Shown here piece by piece: positions 26,146 to 36,061 of a DNA stretch of 52,859 bases (the first letter of the stretch is position 1; each line of letters opens with the position of its first letter). The DNA comes from Octopus sinensis. Lineage: Eukaryota. The translations under genes were made by a program, and so were the position numbers. The stretch is taken from contig NW_021833350.1 of assembly GCF_006345805.1 (NCBI RefSeq), positions 1 to 52,859 of the forward strand. Direction: 5' to 3'. The notes under the pieces are model-generated. The model saw only the letters and a list, made by a program, of their open reading frames with translations, had not been told where the DNA came from and ran no database searches.

Positions 26146-26765
26146 AGGCGTGGCTGTGTGATAAGTAGCTTGCTAACCAACCACATGGTTCCGGGTTCAG
26201 TCCCACTGCGTGGCATCTTGGGCAAGTGTCTTCTGCTATAGCCCCGGGCCGACCAAAGCCTGTGAGTGGATTTGGTAGACGGAAACTGAAAGACGCCCGT
26301 CGTATATATGTATATAGGCGCAGGAGTTGCTGTGTGGTAAGTAGCATGCTAACCAACCACATGGTTCCTGGTTCAGTCCCACTGTGTGGCATCTTGGGCA
26401 AGTGTCTTCTGCTATAGCCTCGGCCGACCAAGCCTTGTGAGTGGATTTGGTAGACGGAAACTGAAGAAGCCTGTCGTATATATGTATAATATATATATTA
26501 TATATATTTATATATATATATAATATGTGTGTGTTGTGTGTGTGTATTTGTTATTGTTTGTGTGTCTGTGTTTGTCCACCTAGCATTGCTTGACAACCGA
26601 TGCTGGTGTGTTTACATACCCGTCACTTAGCGGTCCAGTAACAGAGACCGATAGAATAAGTACTGGGCTTACACAGAATAACTACTCCCGGGGTCGATTT
26701 GCTGGACTAAAGGCGGTGCTCCAGCATGGCCCGCAGTCAAGCGACTGAAACCAGTAAAAGAGTAA
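26146..26765 (+). mobile_element. Family A SINE with duplicated head
   Basis: Heads at ~26146 and ~26316, then one tail. Confidence 0.85.
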
Positions 26766-30399: not shown

Positions 30400-32392
30400 T
30401 AGTTCCCATTGGGCTTCCCAAGAGAAGAAGCACAAGCCCTGGCTGACGAAGAAGGTTAAACGAGACCTTCAACTCAGAGATATTGCTTGGGCTGAATTAA
30501 AAAATCTGGATTCGACTGCAGCTTTTAAGGTGTACAAACTCAACGTGACCGAGCCGTGAAAATTGAAAAGGAAGAACGCTTCAGATTGAATGCGGAATCG
30601 CGGCAAACGCCAGTAGCAATCCAAAAACCTTATTTGCCCATGTCCAACGGAATTCCCGCTTGAGCAACCAAATTGCAACGTTGGTAGACTCAACAGGCGT
30701 ATCGATTGAGGACCCTTATCACAGAGTCAATTATTGCCGAGGCTTTTTCAACTATTTTCAAACAATATATGGTTTTGAACCCCCTCCATTTGATAGATCA
30801 GTACCTCCAATGCTTTGATTGGTCATCACGCGGGACAAAGTCGAACGCGTTATTCAAGCCCTCGATGTCAACAAGGGTCACGGCCCTGACAGCATAACAC
30901 CCAAGGGTTATGAAAGCGTTGGCTCTGGTCATCTGCGAGCCCTTAACACGTCTATTCAATATGTCATTGGCGACGGGTGTTATACCTGCGGACGGAGAAA
31001 CAGCGATAATCTGCCCATTTTTCAAAAAAGGGAGCCGCGAAGACCCGCTTACTACAGACCGGTTTCTCTTACATCAATAATCAGCAAGATGTTCGAAACC
31101 ATCCTTAAGAAAAGTATGATGCTCCACCTCCTAAACACACAGCCTCGATCACATGATCCCAACACGGCTTCGTGCCGAAAAGATCATGCTTGACCAGCTT
31201 ACTGGTAATGGAAGAATTGGTGACGCGCATCCTCGATGATAGTGATGCTGTTGACATCGTTTTATTGGACTTTGCCAAAGCTTTTGACTCGGTAAACCAC
31301 CGCCTATTACTTGTCAAGCTTCAAGCATATTTTCTATCCGGATATTGTACGATGGGTTGGTGCCTTCCTCTCAGATCGCTCCTTCCAAGTCCAAGTTAAT
31401 GGTTCGCGGTCCGGCGTCTCCAGTGCAAGCAGTGGCGTGCCTCAAGTTCAGTGCTTGGGCCGTTATTGTTCTTAGTCTTCATAAATGATTTGCCCTTCTA
31501 TTTGCCGACGATTTCAAACTGGTCGCTCCTCGCGGTGGATATAGAGGATCTTCGTCGATGCCTCCACCAAATTTGAGATGGTCTAACGAATGGGACCTGT
31601 GTCTGAACGTGTCAAAGTGCTGTCATCTGCCTGTTGGCTCTCCTCCTCCTGCAACTCACTTGATTTCGAACCGGGTCGTCTGCTGCTGGAGAGGACCGAT
31701 CAGGTAAAGGACCTGGGTATCTTGGTGATCCCTCCTTTTCGCCTTCGGCCCAGTGCGTCCATGCTACCAACAAAGCACGAGGAGTTCTGTTCTTGATTCG
31801 ATGGTCATTCGGAATGCTCACAGCAGCCATATTCCTACCGCTCTATGTCATGCTGGTGAGACCCATATTGGAGTACGGGATTCAAGCCTCTTCTCCTTAT
31901 CTCCTCAAAGACATACAGCATATCGAAAAAGTCCAGAAGCTGGCTACCCGCATGGTTCTTGGTCTCAAGTATTTGTCTTATGAAGAAAACCTGAAGACGC
32001 TCGACCTTTATTCTCTAGAAAAAACGATGACGCTGTGGTGATCTCATTCTCGCCCACAACATCATAAGCGGAAAGTGTAACCTCTCGAAAAAGCTGTTCT
32101 TCACTCCTGCTCCAGAGCGTCGGCTGCGGGGTCATTCCGACAAGCTCTATCTGCGACGATTTCATCTCAATCGAAGGAGAGGGGGCTTTCTCCGTCCGGG
32201 TTGCGGATCCGTGGAAGAAGCTGCAAGACGAGATAGTGAAGATGCCGACGACCGCTCATTTCAAATTCTCCCTTAACCTCAAGTGGCCTGAACTCTTTGC
32301 ATGAACACCACTCTGTATATAACTCCATGTCCCCCTACATGGCCTTGCTTTTTGATTTTTGAGCCAAAAAATTAACTAACTAACTAACTAAC
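30400..32392 (+). mobile_element. 5'-truncated, degenerate CR1-clade LINE (RT region + 3' end)
   Basis: KPWLTKKV, GPDSITPK, YRPVSLTSII, DFAKAFDSVNH, SGVPQ, FADD, VKDLG, LVRPILEYG, IEKVQKLATRMV across frameshifts; ends in a (TAAC)n tail. Confidence 0.9.
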
Positions 32393-33813: not shown

Positions 33814-34437
33814 GAAGAATTCAAAGATTTTAACACATCACTCTGAATATTTCAGCCTCCATAACAAAGATATGTACCTCTTTTAAAGAAAATAAAATAT
33901 AATACATTGAAAGATATAAACCCGTGTGACTATTTGTAACAAAATATTTTAGCACCTTAAAACAACAGCAAACACTTCTTTAATATAATCAATCTGACTC
34001 TAATCAACGAGATTCTTCCTACATCTTGTTTGCCGTTGACATTGTCGTCATACTCAACATCATCATCATCATCATCATTATCATAATTAAGGTGGCCGGC
34101 TGACAGAATACATACATATATACATATATGTACGTATGTATATATATATGCATATATGTATATATATATATGTATATATATATGTATATATATATGTATA
34201 TATATATATATATGTATATATAAATAATACATATATATATATATATAATTAATTAATAAGGGTGAGAGAATTAGATACTAATTTAATAGTATTTTATTCA
34301 ACACCAAGTGGCCTAGTGCTACGAGAAAACCTGGATTATTATAATATTTTATACATATTATAATATTTTTACAAAATAATAAGAGAGAGAGGTCAATATA
34401 TTGCTCACTCTAGCACCAGTTAATCCAAAAGGTTTCA

Positions 34438-34514
34438 GACGAGCTACAAATGGATTTTTTTGTAAGTAATATACATTTAATTCATTAATAGCGAAACAAT
34501 TGTCCCAAAATAAT
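34438..34514 (+). ncRNA. 5'-truncated hammerhead, probably inactive as a monomer
   Basis: Core reads CAGACGA because the inverted arm replaces TTGGCT; stem II, GAAA and GTC are intact. Confidence 0.65.
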
Positions 34515-34954
34515 CTGTATTTTTGTTATTTTTTACTTGCCCTGTCCGTGTGAGCTAACAGTCGTACTGGCTTTCATGGAAACATGTATTTTCGTGGTTG
34601 AAACCTTTTGGATTAACTGGTGCTAGAGTGAGCAATATTTGACCACTCTCTTATATTTTTTTGTAAAAATATTATAATATGTTATAAAATATTATAATAA
34701 TCCAGGTTTCTCGTAGCACTAGGCCACTTGGTGTTGAATAAATATACTATTAAATTAGTATCTATTCTCTCACCCTTATTAATTATTATAATTATGCTGC
34801 ATTTACTTCTAAATGCTGTATTTGTTTTCCGTGAAAGTTTGGCGCGCTGTTGGTTGGGGCATTTGAATTATAACGTCGGATGTAATCAATTGAACCACAC
34901 CGTATTTATCGTTATATGGTAAAATCTGGCGTGTGATTGAGTGGATTTCATCCA

Positions 34955-35046
34955 GATAGTCTTGGCTGACGAGCTACAAATGGATTTTTTTGTAAGTAAT
35001 ATTACATTTAATTCATTAATAGCGAAACAATTGTCCCAAAATAATC
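34955..35046 (+). ncRNA. Type I hammerhead ribozyme, predicted cleavage after C35035
   Basis: Stem I TTGG/CCAA (distal GAT/ATC); core CTGACGA 34966-34972; stem II GCTA/TAGC with long extension; GAAA 35024-35027; palindromic helix III ACAATTGT; GTC triplet. Confidence 0.85.
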
Positions 35047-35488
35047 TGTATTTTTGTTATTTTTTACTTGCCCTGTCCTTGTGAGCTAACAGTCGTACTG
35101 GCTTTCATGGGAAACATGTATTTTCGTGGTTGAAACCTTTTGGATTAACTGGTGCTAGAGTGAGCAATATATTGACCACTCTCTTATATTTATTTTGTAA
35201 AATATTATAATATGTTATAAAATATTATAATAATCCAGGTTTCTCGTAGCACTAGGCCACTTGGTGTTGAATAAATATACTATTAAATTAGTATCTAATT
35301 CTCTCACCCTTATTAATTAATTATAATTATGCTGCATTTATTTCTAATTGCTGTATTTGTTTTTTCGTGAAAGTTTGGCTGCGCTGTTGGTTGGGGCATT
35401 TGAATTTATCGTCGGATGTAATCAATTGAACCACACGCGTATTTATCGTTATGGTAAAATCTGGCGTGTGATTGAGTGGATTTCATCA

Positions 35489-35580
35489 GATAGTCTTGGC
35501 TGACGAGCTACAAATGGATTTTTTTGTAAGTAATATTACATTTAATTCATTAATAGCGAAACAATTGTCCCAAAATAATC
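35489..35580 (+). ncRNA. Type I hammerhead ribozyme, second intact copy, predicted cleavage after C35569
   Basis: Same motif: CTGACGA 35500-35506, TAGC-GAAA 35554-35561, CAATTGTC, CCAA. Confidence 0.85.
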
Positions 35581-35770
35581 TGTATTTTTGTTATTTTTTA
35601 CTTGCCCTGTCCGTGTGAGCTAACAGTCGTACTGGCTTTCATGGGAAACATGTATTTTCGTGGTTGAACCTTTTGGATTAACTGGTGCTAGAGTGAGCAA
35701 TATATTGACCACTCTCTTATATTTATTTTATATATATATATATTATGTATATATGAATACAGCCATACAA

Positions 35771-35807
<37 letters not shown>

Positions 35808-35844
35808 GTATATATATGTATACATATATATAGATATATAAATC

Positions 35845-35876
<32 letters not shown>

Positions 35877-36061
35877 TATATACATGCGTGTGTGTGATAT
35901 ATATAATGATCTATAGATATATATCATATAAATATATATAAATATATATATATATATGTGTGTGCGTGTGAGTATATATAGACCATACAGACACATATAC
36001 ATGAGGAGGTCGTGCCTACTACATCCTGTTTCATTAGAAGTTTCCTTTTAACTGTTGGCAG

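What the first reader, a model, noticed from the sequence alone, without database searches (positions are those of the whole stretch)
34244..35729. Tandem hammerhead-ribozyme element: a candidate cephalopod retrozyme making a ~534-nt self-cleaved/circular RNA
Seen: a ~532-bp, AT-rich unit with no convincing ORF, repeated ~2.4 times with only a few indels between copies. Each unit holds a hammerhead motif; two are intact, and the predicted GUC sites after 35035 and 35569 are 534 nt apart. Established: tandem non-coding units each with a type I hammerhead define non-LTR retrozymes (newt satellite 2, schistosome Sm-alpha, cricket pDo500, coral and mussel retrozymes), which yield monomeric linear and circular RNAs. 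Inference: read-through transcription would excise monomer 35036-35569 for circularisation and RT copying. The unit is longer than most animal retrozymes I recall, and I do not recall one described from octopus (not verified).
Basis: partly seen in the sequence, partly recalled or inferred. Interest (0 to 1): 0.92.

Follow-up and report, generated by a model that had tools for sequence, protein, structure and literature searches.

The report
Hammerhead-ribozyme retrozyme inserted Penelope-style
This is a small non-coding mobile element, about 534 bp repeated head to tail, each copy carrying a complete self-cutting hammerhead RNA motif; it is a new example, from an apparent cephalopod genome, of the already known animal "retrozymes", not a new kind of thing.

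Summary
34438-35729 is a head-to-tail array of 2.42 units of 531-534 bp, 96.7% identical. My descriptor finds these two and nothing else in the window; the chance rate is 0.007 per shuffled window and 0 in 5000 shuffles of the unit.

That junction, not mutation, truncates the third hammerhead. Both outer ends lie in a (TA)n microsatellite. Partial tandem, inverted truncated copy and a TA-rich target form the published insertion signature of Penelope-like elements (PLEs), now argued to mobilise animal retrozymes.

Helix III is a 2-bp stem with a palindromic AAUU loop, the dimer-dependent animal type. The monomer RNA is strongly structured (z about -4.5) and hides the ribozyme core.

Limits: Rfam hammerhead models give no hit, probably because of a ~43-nt extension of helix II. 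No other copy was found in any collection, so core conservation is untested. Cleavage and circles are untested.

Verdict: probable non-autonomous PLE-type retrozyme, a new member of a known kind, of moderate interest.

The parts
34108..34243 (.). Left flank: TA-rich microsatellite (TATA/TATG type). With the right flank it forms the target into which the element inserted.
   Evidence: TRF rows 34108-34247; sequence
34244..34437 (-). Inverted, 5'-truncated partial unit (unit positions 96-291), joined head to head with the direct array. Its 3' end faces the left microsatellite.
   Evidence: blastn 95.9% over 197 columns, minus orientation; alignment A1; with 34600-34790 it can form a ~195-bp hairpin, -307.8 kcal/mol, z -32
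34438..34504 (+). Partial unit 0 (unit positions 467-534). Its hammerhead is truncated by the junction and lacks C3, U4 and the 5' strand of helix I. It keeps helix II, GAAA, the ACAAUUGU palindrome and GUC (34502-34504).
   Evidence: blastn 98.5%; sequence; alignment
34505..35035 (+). Full unit 1 (531 bp), bounded by GUC sites after 34504 and 35035.
   Evidence: blastn 96.7% to unit 2; alignment
34953..35048 (+). Hammerhead 1 (type I). Helix I: 34962-34965/35036-35039 plus distal 34953-34957/35044-35048. CUGACGA 34966-34972. Helix II 34973-35023: 4-bp base GCUA/UAGC plus a ~43-nt extended hairpin. GAAA 35024-35027. Helix III 35027-35034: 2 bp plus AAUU loop, palindrome ACAAUUGU. Predicted cleavage after C35035.
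   Evidence: descriptor hit; shuffles; folding
35036..35569 (+). Full unit 2 (534 bp). This is the monomer predicted to be released between two complete hammerheads.
   Evidence: Linear fold -138.8 kcal/mol, z -4.49; circular fold -133.4 kcal/mol, z -4.5, 68.5% paired
35487..35582 (+). Hammerhead 2 (type I). CUGACGA 35500-35506, GAAA 35558-35561, predicted cleavage after C35569.
   Evidence: descriptor hit; its core, helix II, helix III and the helix I pairs are identical to hammerhead 1; the one indel (C34952) lies just outside the distal helix I pairs
35570..35729 (+). Partial unit 3 (unit positions 1-160). This is the 3' end of the insertion, abutting the right microsatellite.
   Evidence: blastn; alignment; sequence
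35730..35957 (.). Right flank: (TA)n microsatellite, the other half of the target.
   Evidence: TRF row 35718-35957; sequence

Best explanation
The locus is one insertion of a non-autonomous, hammerhead-bearing retroelement: an animal non-LTR retrozyme, in current terms a non-coding derivative of a Penelope-like element (PLE).

Shown by the sequence:
- A 534-bp non-coding AT-rich unit is present as 2.42 head-to-tail copies.
- An inverted, 5'-truncated copy sits at the 5' side.
- Both outer (3') ends lie in a (TA)n microsatellite.
- Each full unit carries a complete type I hammerhead whose helix III is a 2-bp stem capped by a palindromic AAUU loop.

Inferred mechanism of insertion: a PLE reverse transcriptase / GIY-YIG endonuclease supplied in trans cut both strands of the TA-rich target. 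It then primed reverse transcription on both strands from a multimeric or circular RNA of the element. One strand gave the 2.4-unit array and the other gave the short inverted copy. Both cDNAs stopped before their 5' ends and were joined head to head at 34437/34438.

Inferred RNA behaviour: when the array is transcribed, two hammerhead domains pair through the palindrome ACAAUUGU into a double hammerhead with an 8-bp helix III. They cut after C35035 and C35569, releasing a 534-nt RNA with 5'-OH and 2',3'-cyclic phosphate ends. A host RtcB-type ligase can circularise such an RNA. In double-hammerhead geometry the catalytic core of one domain cuts the site of the other. The truncated copy's GUC (after 34504) may therefore also be cut by the core of hammerhead 1, releasing a second monomer, 34505-35035. 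The released monomer refolds into a compact structure in which GAAAC...GU pairs with unit positions 6-20. This keeps the ribozyme off.
For: - Tandem anatomy and the inverted copy.
- Hammerhead: all core positions are present (C3 U4 G5 A6 C7 G8 A9, G12 A13 A14, A15.1-U16.1, C15.2-G16.2, C17, G10.1-C11.1), with three helices.
- Chance: only two descriptor hits in the window, both in the array. The chance rate is 0.007 per shuffled window and 0 in 5000 unit shuffles.
- Dimer dependence: the monomer hammerhead fold is -19.0 kcal/mol against an MFE of -24.6. The double-hammerhead fold is -48.9 against 2 x -19.0 for two separate monomers and -52.7 unconstrained.
- Helix III matches the published canonical metazoan type I architecture of a 1-2 bp stem with a 2-4 nt palindromic loop that is active as a dimer (PMC4209133).
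- Monomer RNA: z -4.49 linear and -4.5 circular. The plus strand is 35 kcal/mol more stable than the minus strand. The core is sequestered in the circle.
- Published PLE signature: partial tandems, an adjacent inverted 5'-truncated copy, and (TA)n or microsatellite bias (PMC8557442). The Poseidon PLE cuts and extends both DNA strands at AT-rich sites and initiates reverse transcription internally, downstream of the hammerhead (PMC11167929). Here the array ends 160 nt downstream of the cleavage site.
- Retrozymes co-occur with PLEs and are related to their pLTRs (bioRxiv 10.64898/2026.07.22.740005).
- No coding capacity and low G+C.
Against: - No Rfam hammerhead family matches, at gathering score or at E up to 10. 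My explanation, the ~43-nt helix II extension, is not proven.
- No second copy exists in the window. None was found in viral, prokaryotic-genome or metagenome collections or in the protein collection. Multi-copy status and conservation of the core are therefore unknown.
- Within the array the hammerhead segment has 1 difference against about 17 in the rest of the unit. This is not significant.
- The proximal helix I is only 4 bp, and the thermodynamic optimum closes the core.
- PLE-type hammerheads cleave poorly in vitro. Cleavage was dispensable for PLE insertion in vitro, and no RNA-seq reads began or ended at the PAc hammerhead cleavage site.
- The two 3' ends of the insertion, unit positions 160 and about 291, differ by about 130 nt. 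This is larger than the published 30-40 bp PLE tail.
- No PLE ORF is present in the window.
Confidence: 0.7

Rival explanations
1. This is a dead remnant of an autonomous Penelope-like element, not a member of a separate non-coding family. On this view the 534-bp unit is a pLTR plus the first codons of the ORF, left after internal deletion of the RT/EN gene at this one locus. It has never propagated as a retrozyme.
For: The insertion architecture is PLE-like. An ATG (34980-34982) lies near the start of stem II, followed by a 34-codon ORF. [quoted passage not shown] No other copy of the unit was found.
Against: The tandem period is exactly the short unit in both full copies, and the inverted copy is collinear with it. 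The short form was therefore the template that was copied, not the product of a later deletion in one copy. No trace of RT or GIY-YIG coding sequence is present in any frame. The collections searched hold essentially no cephalopod DNA, so absence of copies carries little weight.
Confidence: 0.15
2. This is a local tandem duplication or minisatellite unrelated to retrotransposition. The hammerhead-like motif arose by chance and has no activity.
For: Rfam models do not match. A genome of a few gigabases would hold a few hundred chance descriptor hits at 0.007 per 52.8 kb. The window is full of tandem arrays.
Against: The chance of such a motif in this particular 534-bp unit is below 1 in 5000. 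The motif also has features the descriptor did not require. These are the perfect 8-nt palindrome at helix III, the G10.1-C11.1 pair, GAAAC/GUC, a distal 5-bp extension of helix I, and a fully paired extension of helix II. The inverted truncated copy and the microsatellite target are not expected from replication slippage.
Confidence: 0.07
3. This is an assembly artefact. The inverted junction at 34437/34438, the copy number, or both come from a chimeric or fold-back long read or from mis-assembly of a repeat inside a microsatellite.
For: 13 of the 18 differing columns between units are 1-2 nt indels, mostly in homopolymer or dinucleotide runs. This is typical of uncorrected long-read errors. 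PLE tandem/inverted structures are known to cause assembly problems.
Against: The inverted copy carries its own substitutions relative to all direct copies, so it is not a simple fold-back of the same read. The architecture is the one expected biologically. The hammerhead finding does not depend on the junction.
Confidence: 0.05

Closest known systems
Metazoan non-LTR retrozymes (coral, mussel, axolotl; Cervera and de la Pena 2020, PMC7229834)
   Same: Head-to-tail repeats of a few hundred bp. Low G+C. No coding capacity. One type I hammerhead per unit. A short, palindrome-capped helix III that favours dimeric cleavage. A structured monomer RNA.
   Different: The unit of 534 bp is above the ~170-400 nt RNAs of that paper, though within the 51-972 bp range of later work. 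Helix II carries a ~43-nt extension instead of a 4-bp stem with a small loop. Helix I is 4 bp plus an internal loop plus 5 bp. Rfam hammerhead models do not match. Expression, circles and copy number are unknown here.
Penelope-like elements and their pLTR hammerheads (PMC4209133, PMC8557442, PMC11167929)
   Same: Partial tandem plus an adjacent inverted 5'-truncated copy. Insertion into TA-rich microsatellite DNA. A hammerhead with a short helix I (4-5 bp), a larger than usual helix II and a small palindromic helix III. The 3' end of the insert lies downstream of the hammerhead. An ATG lies near the start of stem II.
   Different: There is no RT or GIY-YIG ORF. The unit is 0.53 kb rather than about 3 kb. 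Helix III is the canonical 2-bp type, not the minimal form with no helix III. The two 3' ends differ by about 130 nt rather than by a 30-40 bp tail. Homology to a PLE of the same genome could not be tested.
Newt satellite 2, Schistosoma Sm-alpha, cave-cricket pDo500 (classical animal hammerhead repeats; from my own knowledge and as summarised)
   Same: Tandem or dispersed non-coding repeats with type I hammerheads. A weak helix III with a palindromic loop. Double-hammerhead cleavage of multimeric transcripts.
   Different: Those units are about 150-350 bp and occur in very high copy number with demonstrated cleavage. Here only one locus is seen and nothing has been demonstrated.
Plant LTR retrozymes (PMC4918200)
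   Same: Non-autonomous retroelements whose transcripts are cut by hammerheads into circularisable RNAs of 600-1000 nt.
   Different: The plant elements have type III hammerheads inside true LTRs, with a primer binding site and polypurine tract and G+C above 55%. They are mobilised by Gypsy-type LTR machinery. None of that is present here.

Membership tests
Hammerhead ribozyme, type I | Conserved core: C3 U4 G5 A6 N7 G8 A9, G12 A13 A14, A15.1-U16.1, H17 (not G) | tested here: met
   CUGACGA, GAAA and GUC are at the stated coordinates in both full copies. G10.1-C11.1 and C15.2-G16.2 are also present.
Hammerhead ribozyme, type I | Three helices around the core, with helix I open and helices II and III closed | tested here: met
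   Helix I is 4 + 5 bp. Helix II is a 4-bp base plus an extended hairpin. Helix III is 2 bp plus an AAUU loop. Unconstrained MFE folding recovers helices I and II.
Hammerhead ribozyme, type I | Match to a curated covariance model (Rfam hammerhead families) | tested here: not met
   No hammerhead family hit at gathering score over the window or at E up to 10 over 34200-35760. The ~43-nt helix II extension is a likely but unproven reason.
Hammerhead ribozyme, type I | Conservation or covariation of core and helices among independent copies | tested here: inconclusive
   Only the copies of this one array are available. There is 1 difference in the hammerhead segment against about 17 elsewhere, which is not significant. 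No relatives were found.
Hammerhead ribozyme, type I | Site-specific self-cleavage | not testable with these tools
   Needs in vitro transcription of monomer and dimer constructs.
Animal non-LTR retrozyme | Head-to-tail repeats of a short non-coding unit, each with a type I hammerhead, and low G+C | tested here: met
   2.42 units of 531-534 bp at 32% G+C. The longest ORF is 64 aa, with no relatives.
Animal non-LTR retrozyme | Multiple copies dispersed in the genome (a transposable family) | tested here: inconclusive
   No other copy in the 52.8-kb window. The public collections available hold no matching DNA. The source genome could not be searched.
Animal non-LTR retrozyme | Monomeric linear and circular RNAs in vivo | not testable with these tools
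   No transcriptome access. Only the predicted compact fold of the monomer is available.
Insertion made by Penelope-like element machinery | Partial tandem plus an adjacent inverted 5'-truncated copy | tested here: met
   The direct array runs 34438-35729. The inverted copy 34244-34437 is joined to it head to head. The feature is defined in PMC8557442.
Insertion made by Penelope-like element machinery | AT-rich or microsatellite target | tested here: met
   TA-type microsatellite on both sides, 34108-34247 and 35718-35957. Literature.
Insertion made by Penelope-like element machinery | 30-40 bp tail at one end, reflecting two adjacent RT start sites | tested here: not met
   The two 3' ends map to unit positions 160 and about 291, which are about 130 nt apart. 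No 30-40 bp extension is recognisable.
Insertion made by Penelope-like element machinery | Sequence relationship of the unit to the pLTR of a PLE in the same genome | not testable with these tools
   No PLE ORF in the window. No route to cephalopod PLE loci with the available collections.

The most novel reading that the evidence does not exclude
The element is the founding member of a cephalopod retrozyme family with a hammerhead variant that current covariance models miss, because helix II is extended by ~43 nt and carries a vestigial PLE start codon. This locus would also preserve in one insertion scar the direct mechanistic link between retrozymes and PLE double-strand target-primed reverse transcription. 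That scar is a head-to-head inverted copy plus a rolling tandem, with both 3' ends in (TA)n. If the family is expressed, it would add an abundant ~534-nt ribozyme-derived circular RNA to cephalopod transcriptomes. Transcripts entering from the left would form a ~195-bp perfect hairpin, a natural substrate for RNA editing or small-RNA pathways.
Probability: 0.25. Interest if true: 0.5.

Novelty: new member of a known kind. Interest (0 to 1): 0.35.

Why it matters
Hammerhead retrozymes are known from corals, mussels, insects, fishes and amphibians. Finding one in a cephalopod-like genome extends the host range but does not change the picture.

Two points would interest a specialist.

First, the motif escapes all Rfam hammerhead models, so genome surveys based on those models probably undercount such elements.

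Second, the locus shows the full Penelope-type insertion signature on a non-coding hammerhead unit. This is structural support for the recent proposal, so far phylogenetic and mostly from vertebrates, that PLEs mobilise animal retrozymes.

If transcribed, the locus predicts specific, easily tested RNA species: 531- and 534-nt linear and circular monomers, and a long hairpin.

Tried and rejected
1. Rfam over the whole window at gathering score, and over 34200-35760 at E up to 10. No hammerhead or other ribozyme family matched, only four chance-level hits to unrelated families.

2. Looking for relatives through spurious ORFs. A 348-aa concatenate of eight unit ORFs was searched against 5.8 billion proteins, with no hit at E up to 0.01.

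3. DNA pattern scans. The pattern CTGANGAGCT-N(35-65)-AGCGAAACAATTGTC gave 0 hits in viral, prokaryotic-genome and metagenome contigs. The 24-mer GGATTAACTGGTGCTAGAGTGAGC gave 0 hits in metagenome contigs. These collections are not expected to hold cephalopod DNA, so the negatives say little.

4. Identifying the source genome.
- Exact look-up of the window's LINE RT ORF: not on record.
- The homology search found only relatives of about 50% identity; the named ones are from cuttlefish.
- The closest relatives, at 81% and 68% identity over about half the query, lie in unnamed contigs of 767 and 722 bp; a third contig fetched (1535 bp) carries a hit of only 52% identity.
- The one long contig fetched (L002) shares no SINEs with the window and no unit sequence.

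5. Reaching a cephalopod PLE to compare pLTRs. A partial Poseidon_Ac protein was seen in a paper supplement. I ran no further search on it, because only the best 120 hits are listed and they would be vertebrate PLEs.

6. Conservation of the hammerhead within the array: too few differences to be informative.

7. A target-site duplication: not discernible, because both flanks are the same microsatellite.

8. A relaxed descriptor gives one more hit at 14414-14492, inside the LINE RT ORF (helices 3/3/1 bp). The expectation is 0.06 per shuffled window, so I treated it as chance.
Full report
**1. What is in the sequence**

Self-comparison of the unit 35036-35569 against the window and a five-way alignment give this anatomy:

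| Coordinates | Strand | Unit positions | Note |
|---|---|---|---|
| 34244-34437 | minus | 96-291 | inverted copy, 95.9% identity |
| 34438-34504 | plus | 467-534 | partial unit 0 |
| 34505-35035 | plus | full, 531 bp | unit 1 |
| 35036-35569 | plus | full, 534 bp | unit 2 |
| 35570-35729 | plus | 1-160 | partial unit 3 |

- The two full units are 96.7% identical. They differ in 18 of 539 columns, and 13 of these are 1-2 nt indels, mostly in homopolymer or dinucleotide runs.
- The direct array is therefore 2.42 units.
- No other copy exists in the window.
- Both outer ends abut TA-type microsatellite, TRF rows 34108-34247 and 35718-35957. No target-site duplication can be read.
- The unit is 32% G+C.
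- Its longest ORF is 64 aa. A concatenate of eight unit ORFs has no relatives among 5.8 billion proteins.

**2. The hammerhead motif**

In hammerhead 1 the elements are:

| Element | Coordinates | Detail |
|---|---|---|
| Helix I, 5' strand | 34953-34957 and 34962-34965 | pairs with the 3' strand |
| Core | 34966-34972 | CUGACGA |
| Helix II | 34973-35023 | GCUA/UAGC base with G10.1-C11.1, a 2x2 internal loop, then an 8-bp and a 5-bp stem |
| Core | 35024-35027 | GAAA |
| Helix III | 35027-35034 | A15.1-U16.1 and C15.2-G16.2, capped by AAUU |
| Cleavage site | after 35035 | C17 |
| Helix I, 3' strand | 35036-35039 and 35044-35048 | |

Hammerhead 2 is the same, shifted by 534 nt.

- A descriptor of my own required CUGANGA, GAAA, U-H, helix I of at least 4 bp, helix II of at least 4 bp with a loop of up to 80 nt, and helix III of at least 2 bp. 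It finds exactly these two sites on both strands of the whole window.
- In 300 dinucleotide shuffles of the window the mean is 0.007 hits. In 5000 shuffles of the unit there are none.
- The motif is therefore far beyond chance for this unit. A whole genome of gigabase size would still hold a few hundred chance hits, so the context matters.
- The third motif, in unit 0, reads CAGACGA. The reason is that the inverted/direct junction at 34437/34438 lies between U4 and G5. It is truncated, not mutated. It still carries helix II, GAAA, the palindrome and GUC (34502-34504).

**3. Rfam**

No hammerhead family matches, either at gathering score over the window or at E up to 10 over 34200-35760. The four matches listed are chance-level hits to unrelated families.

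The most likely reason is the ~43-nt extension of helix II, where the models expect a short loop. This is my inference and was not tested. I record it as a membership criterion that was tested and not met.

**4. Folding**

| Structure | Energy (kcal/mol) |
|---|---|
| 101-nt hammerhead segment, unconstrained MFE | -24.6 |
| Same segment, constrained to the hammerhead fold | -19.0 |
| Two segments as a double hammerhead | -48.9 |
| Two separate hammerhead folds | -38.0 |
| Two segments, unconstrained dimer | -52.7 |
| 534-nt monomer, linear, plus strand | -138.8 (z -4.49) |
| 534-nt monomer, linear, minus strand | -103.6 (z -4.04) |
| 534-nt monomer, circular | -133.4 (z -4.5, 68.5% paired) |

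- The unconstrained MFE of the hammerhead segment keeps helices I and II exactly as drawn. It pairs GACGA with UUGUC across the core, so the core is closed.
- ACAAUUGU is a perfect palindrome, so two domains can form a double hammerhead with a continuous 8-bp helix III.
- The active fold is thus disfavoured in a single domain and nearly competitive in a dimer.
- This is the behaviour described for canonical metazoan type I hammerheads, which have a helix III of 1-2 bp with a 2-4 nt palindromic loop and are active as dimers (PMC4209133; axolotl data in PMC7229834).
- The plus/minus asymmetry in stability fits G-U pairs on the hammerhead strand.
- In the circular fold GAAAC...GU pairs with unit positions 6-20, so the ribozyme is switched off in the monomer.

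**5. How the locus was probably made**

Three published features of Penelope-like elements (PLEs) match this locus.

- PLE insertions are partial tandems. [quoted passage not shown] They show microsatellite bias, (TA)n for Naiads and proposed for Neptune (PMC8557442).
- The purified Poseidon PLE of Anolis cuts and extends both DNA strands. It prefers AT-rich DNA. It starts reverse transcription at internal RNA sites downstream of the hammerhead (PMC11167929).
- A 2026 preprint reports that animal retrozymes co-occur with PLEs and are sister to their pLTRs. It gives retrozyme consensus lengths of 51-972 bp.

The present locus has the tandem, the inverted truncated copy and the TA target. Its 3' end lies 160 nt downstream of the cleavage site.

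I therefore infer double-strand target-primed reverse transcription of a multimeric or circular RNA of the element, by a PLE enzyme supplied in trans.

Some features do not fit neatly:
- The two 3' ends, unit positions 160 and about 291, are about 130 nt apart rather than 30-40 bp.
- Both ends lie at the edge of AU-rich stretches of the unit. This suggests priming by annealing of the nicked (TA)n DNA, which is inference.

A weak further parallel is an ATG at 34980-34982 near the start of stem II, opening a 34-codon ORF. [quoted passage not shown]

**6. What the RNA would do (inferred, not shown)**

- Read-through transcripts would be cut after 35035 and 35569 to release a 534-nt monomer.
- In double-hammerhead geometry the catalytic strands of one domain act on the cleavage site of the other. 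This is established for dimeric hammerheads (Forster et al. 1988, as summarised).
- The intact site after 34504 could therefore be cut by the core of hammerhead 1, releasing a 531-nt monomer as well.
- Circularisation would depend on a host RtcB-type ligase (PMC7229834).
- Against a necessary role, hammerhead-dead mutants of Poseidon still insert in vitro, and no RNA-seq reads beginning or ending at the PAc cleavage site were detected.

**7. What could not be done**

- None could be reached. The collections at hand are viral, prokaryotic or metagenomic.
- The source genome is not in the protein index.
- Taxon evidence is indirect. A degenerate LINE at 13215-16242 has its closest named relatives in the cuttlefish Acanthosepion pharaonis, at 54-57% identity. 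An octopus origin is plausible but unverified.
- Literature searches found no paper describing a hammerhead repeat in a cephalopod. Only open-access papers and preprints are searched.

**8. Verdict**

- The retrozyme reading is the best explanation (about 0.7). The PLE-type insertion scar strengthens it.
- The claims about cleavage and circular RNA remain predictions.
- It is a new member of a known kind. Interest is moderate (0.35), mainly for two reasons: the motif escapes Rfam, and the locus gives structural support to the retrozyme-PLE link.

Noticed in passing
window 34244-34790: The inverted copy and the first direct copy form a ~194-bp near-perfect inverted repeat with a 162-nt spacer. 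As RNA it folds into one long hairpin (-307.8 kcal/mol, z -32). If transcribed from the left it would be long double-stranded RNA, a possible substrate for A-to-I editing or small-RNA production.
   Followed up: partly
window 34980-35084 and 35514-35618: An ATG near the start of hammerhead stem II opens a 34-codon ORF (MDFFVSNITFNSLIAKQLSQNNLYFCYFLLALS...). The position recalls the Poseidon PLE, whose ORF starts at the start of stem II. The peptide has no relatives. It may be a vestige of a PLE start codon or may be chance.
   Followed up: partly
window 34505-35569: 13 of the 18 differing columns between the two full units are 1-2 nt indels, mostly in homopolymer or dinucleotide runs. This is an unusual indel-to-substitution ratio. 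It suggests uncorrected long-read errors, or slippage, rather than age. True divergence may be nearer 1%.
   Followed up: no
window 13215-16242: A degenerate non-LTR retrotransposon (LINE) split over four ORFs: Exo_endo_phos endonuclease, RVT_1 in two pieces, and zf-RVT. The nearest named relatives are cuttlefish proteins at 54-57% identity. An ENA contig (L001) is 77% identical in DNA.
   Followed up: partly
window 21875-24148: About 11 tandem copies of a ~205-bp unit. Each starts with (ATC)n and carries a G+C-rich SINE-like body, with (TA)n between copies. No Rfam hit.
   Followed up: no
window 6433-6977, 26146-26488, 4790-5308 and about 40 dispersed fragments: A very abundant ~180-300-bp SINE-like repeat, whose ORF translations contain ...[26 protein letters not shown].... 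It occurs dispersed on both strands and as short tandem arrays, often next to TA microsatellites.
   Followed up: no
window 14414-14492: The relaxed hammerhead descriptor (helices 3/3/1 bp) gives one extra hit inside the LINE RT ORF. The expectation is 0.06 per shuffled window, so it is at chance level.
   Followed up: yes
window 30819-31193: A 124-aa ORF with a reverse-transcriptase-like motif (YRPVSLTSIISKMFE...) has no Pfam hit at E up to 0.001. It is probably a decayed LINE fragment.
   Followed up: partly
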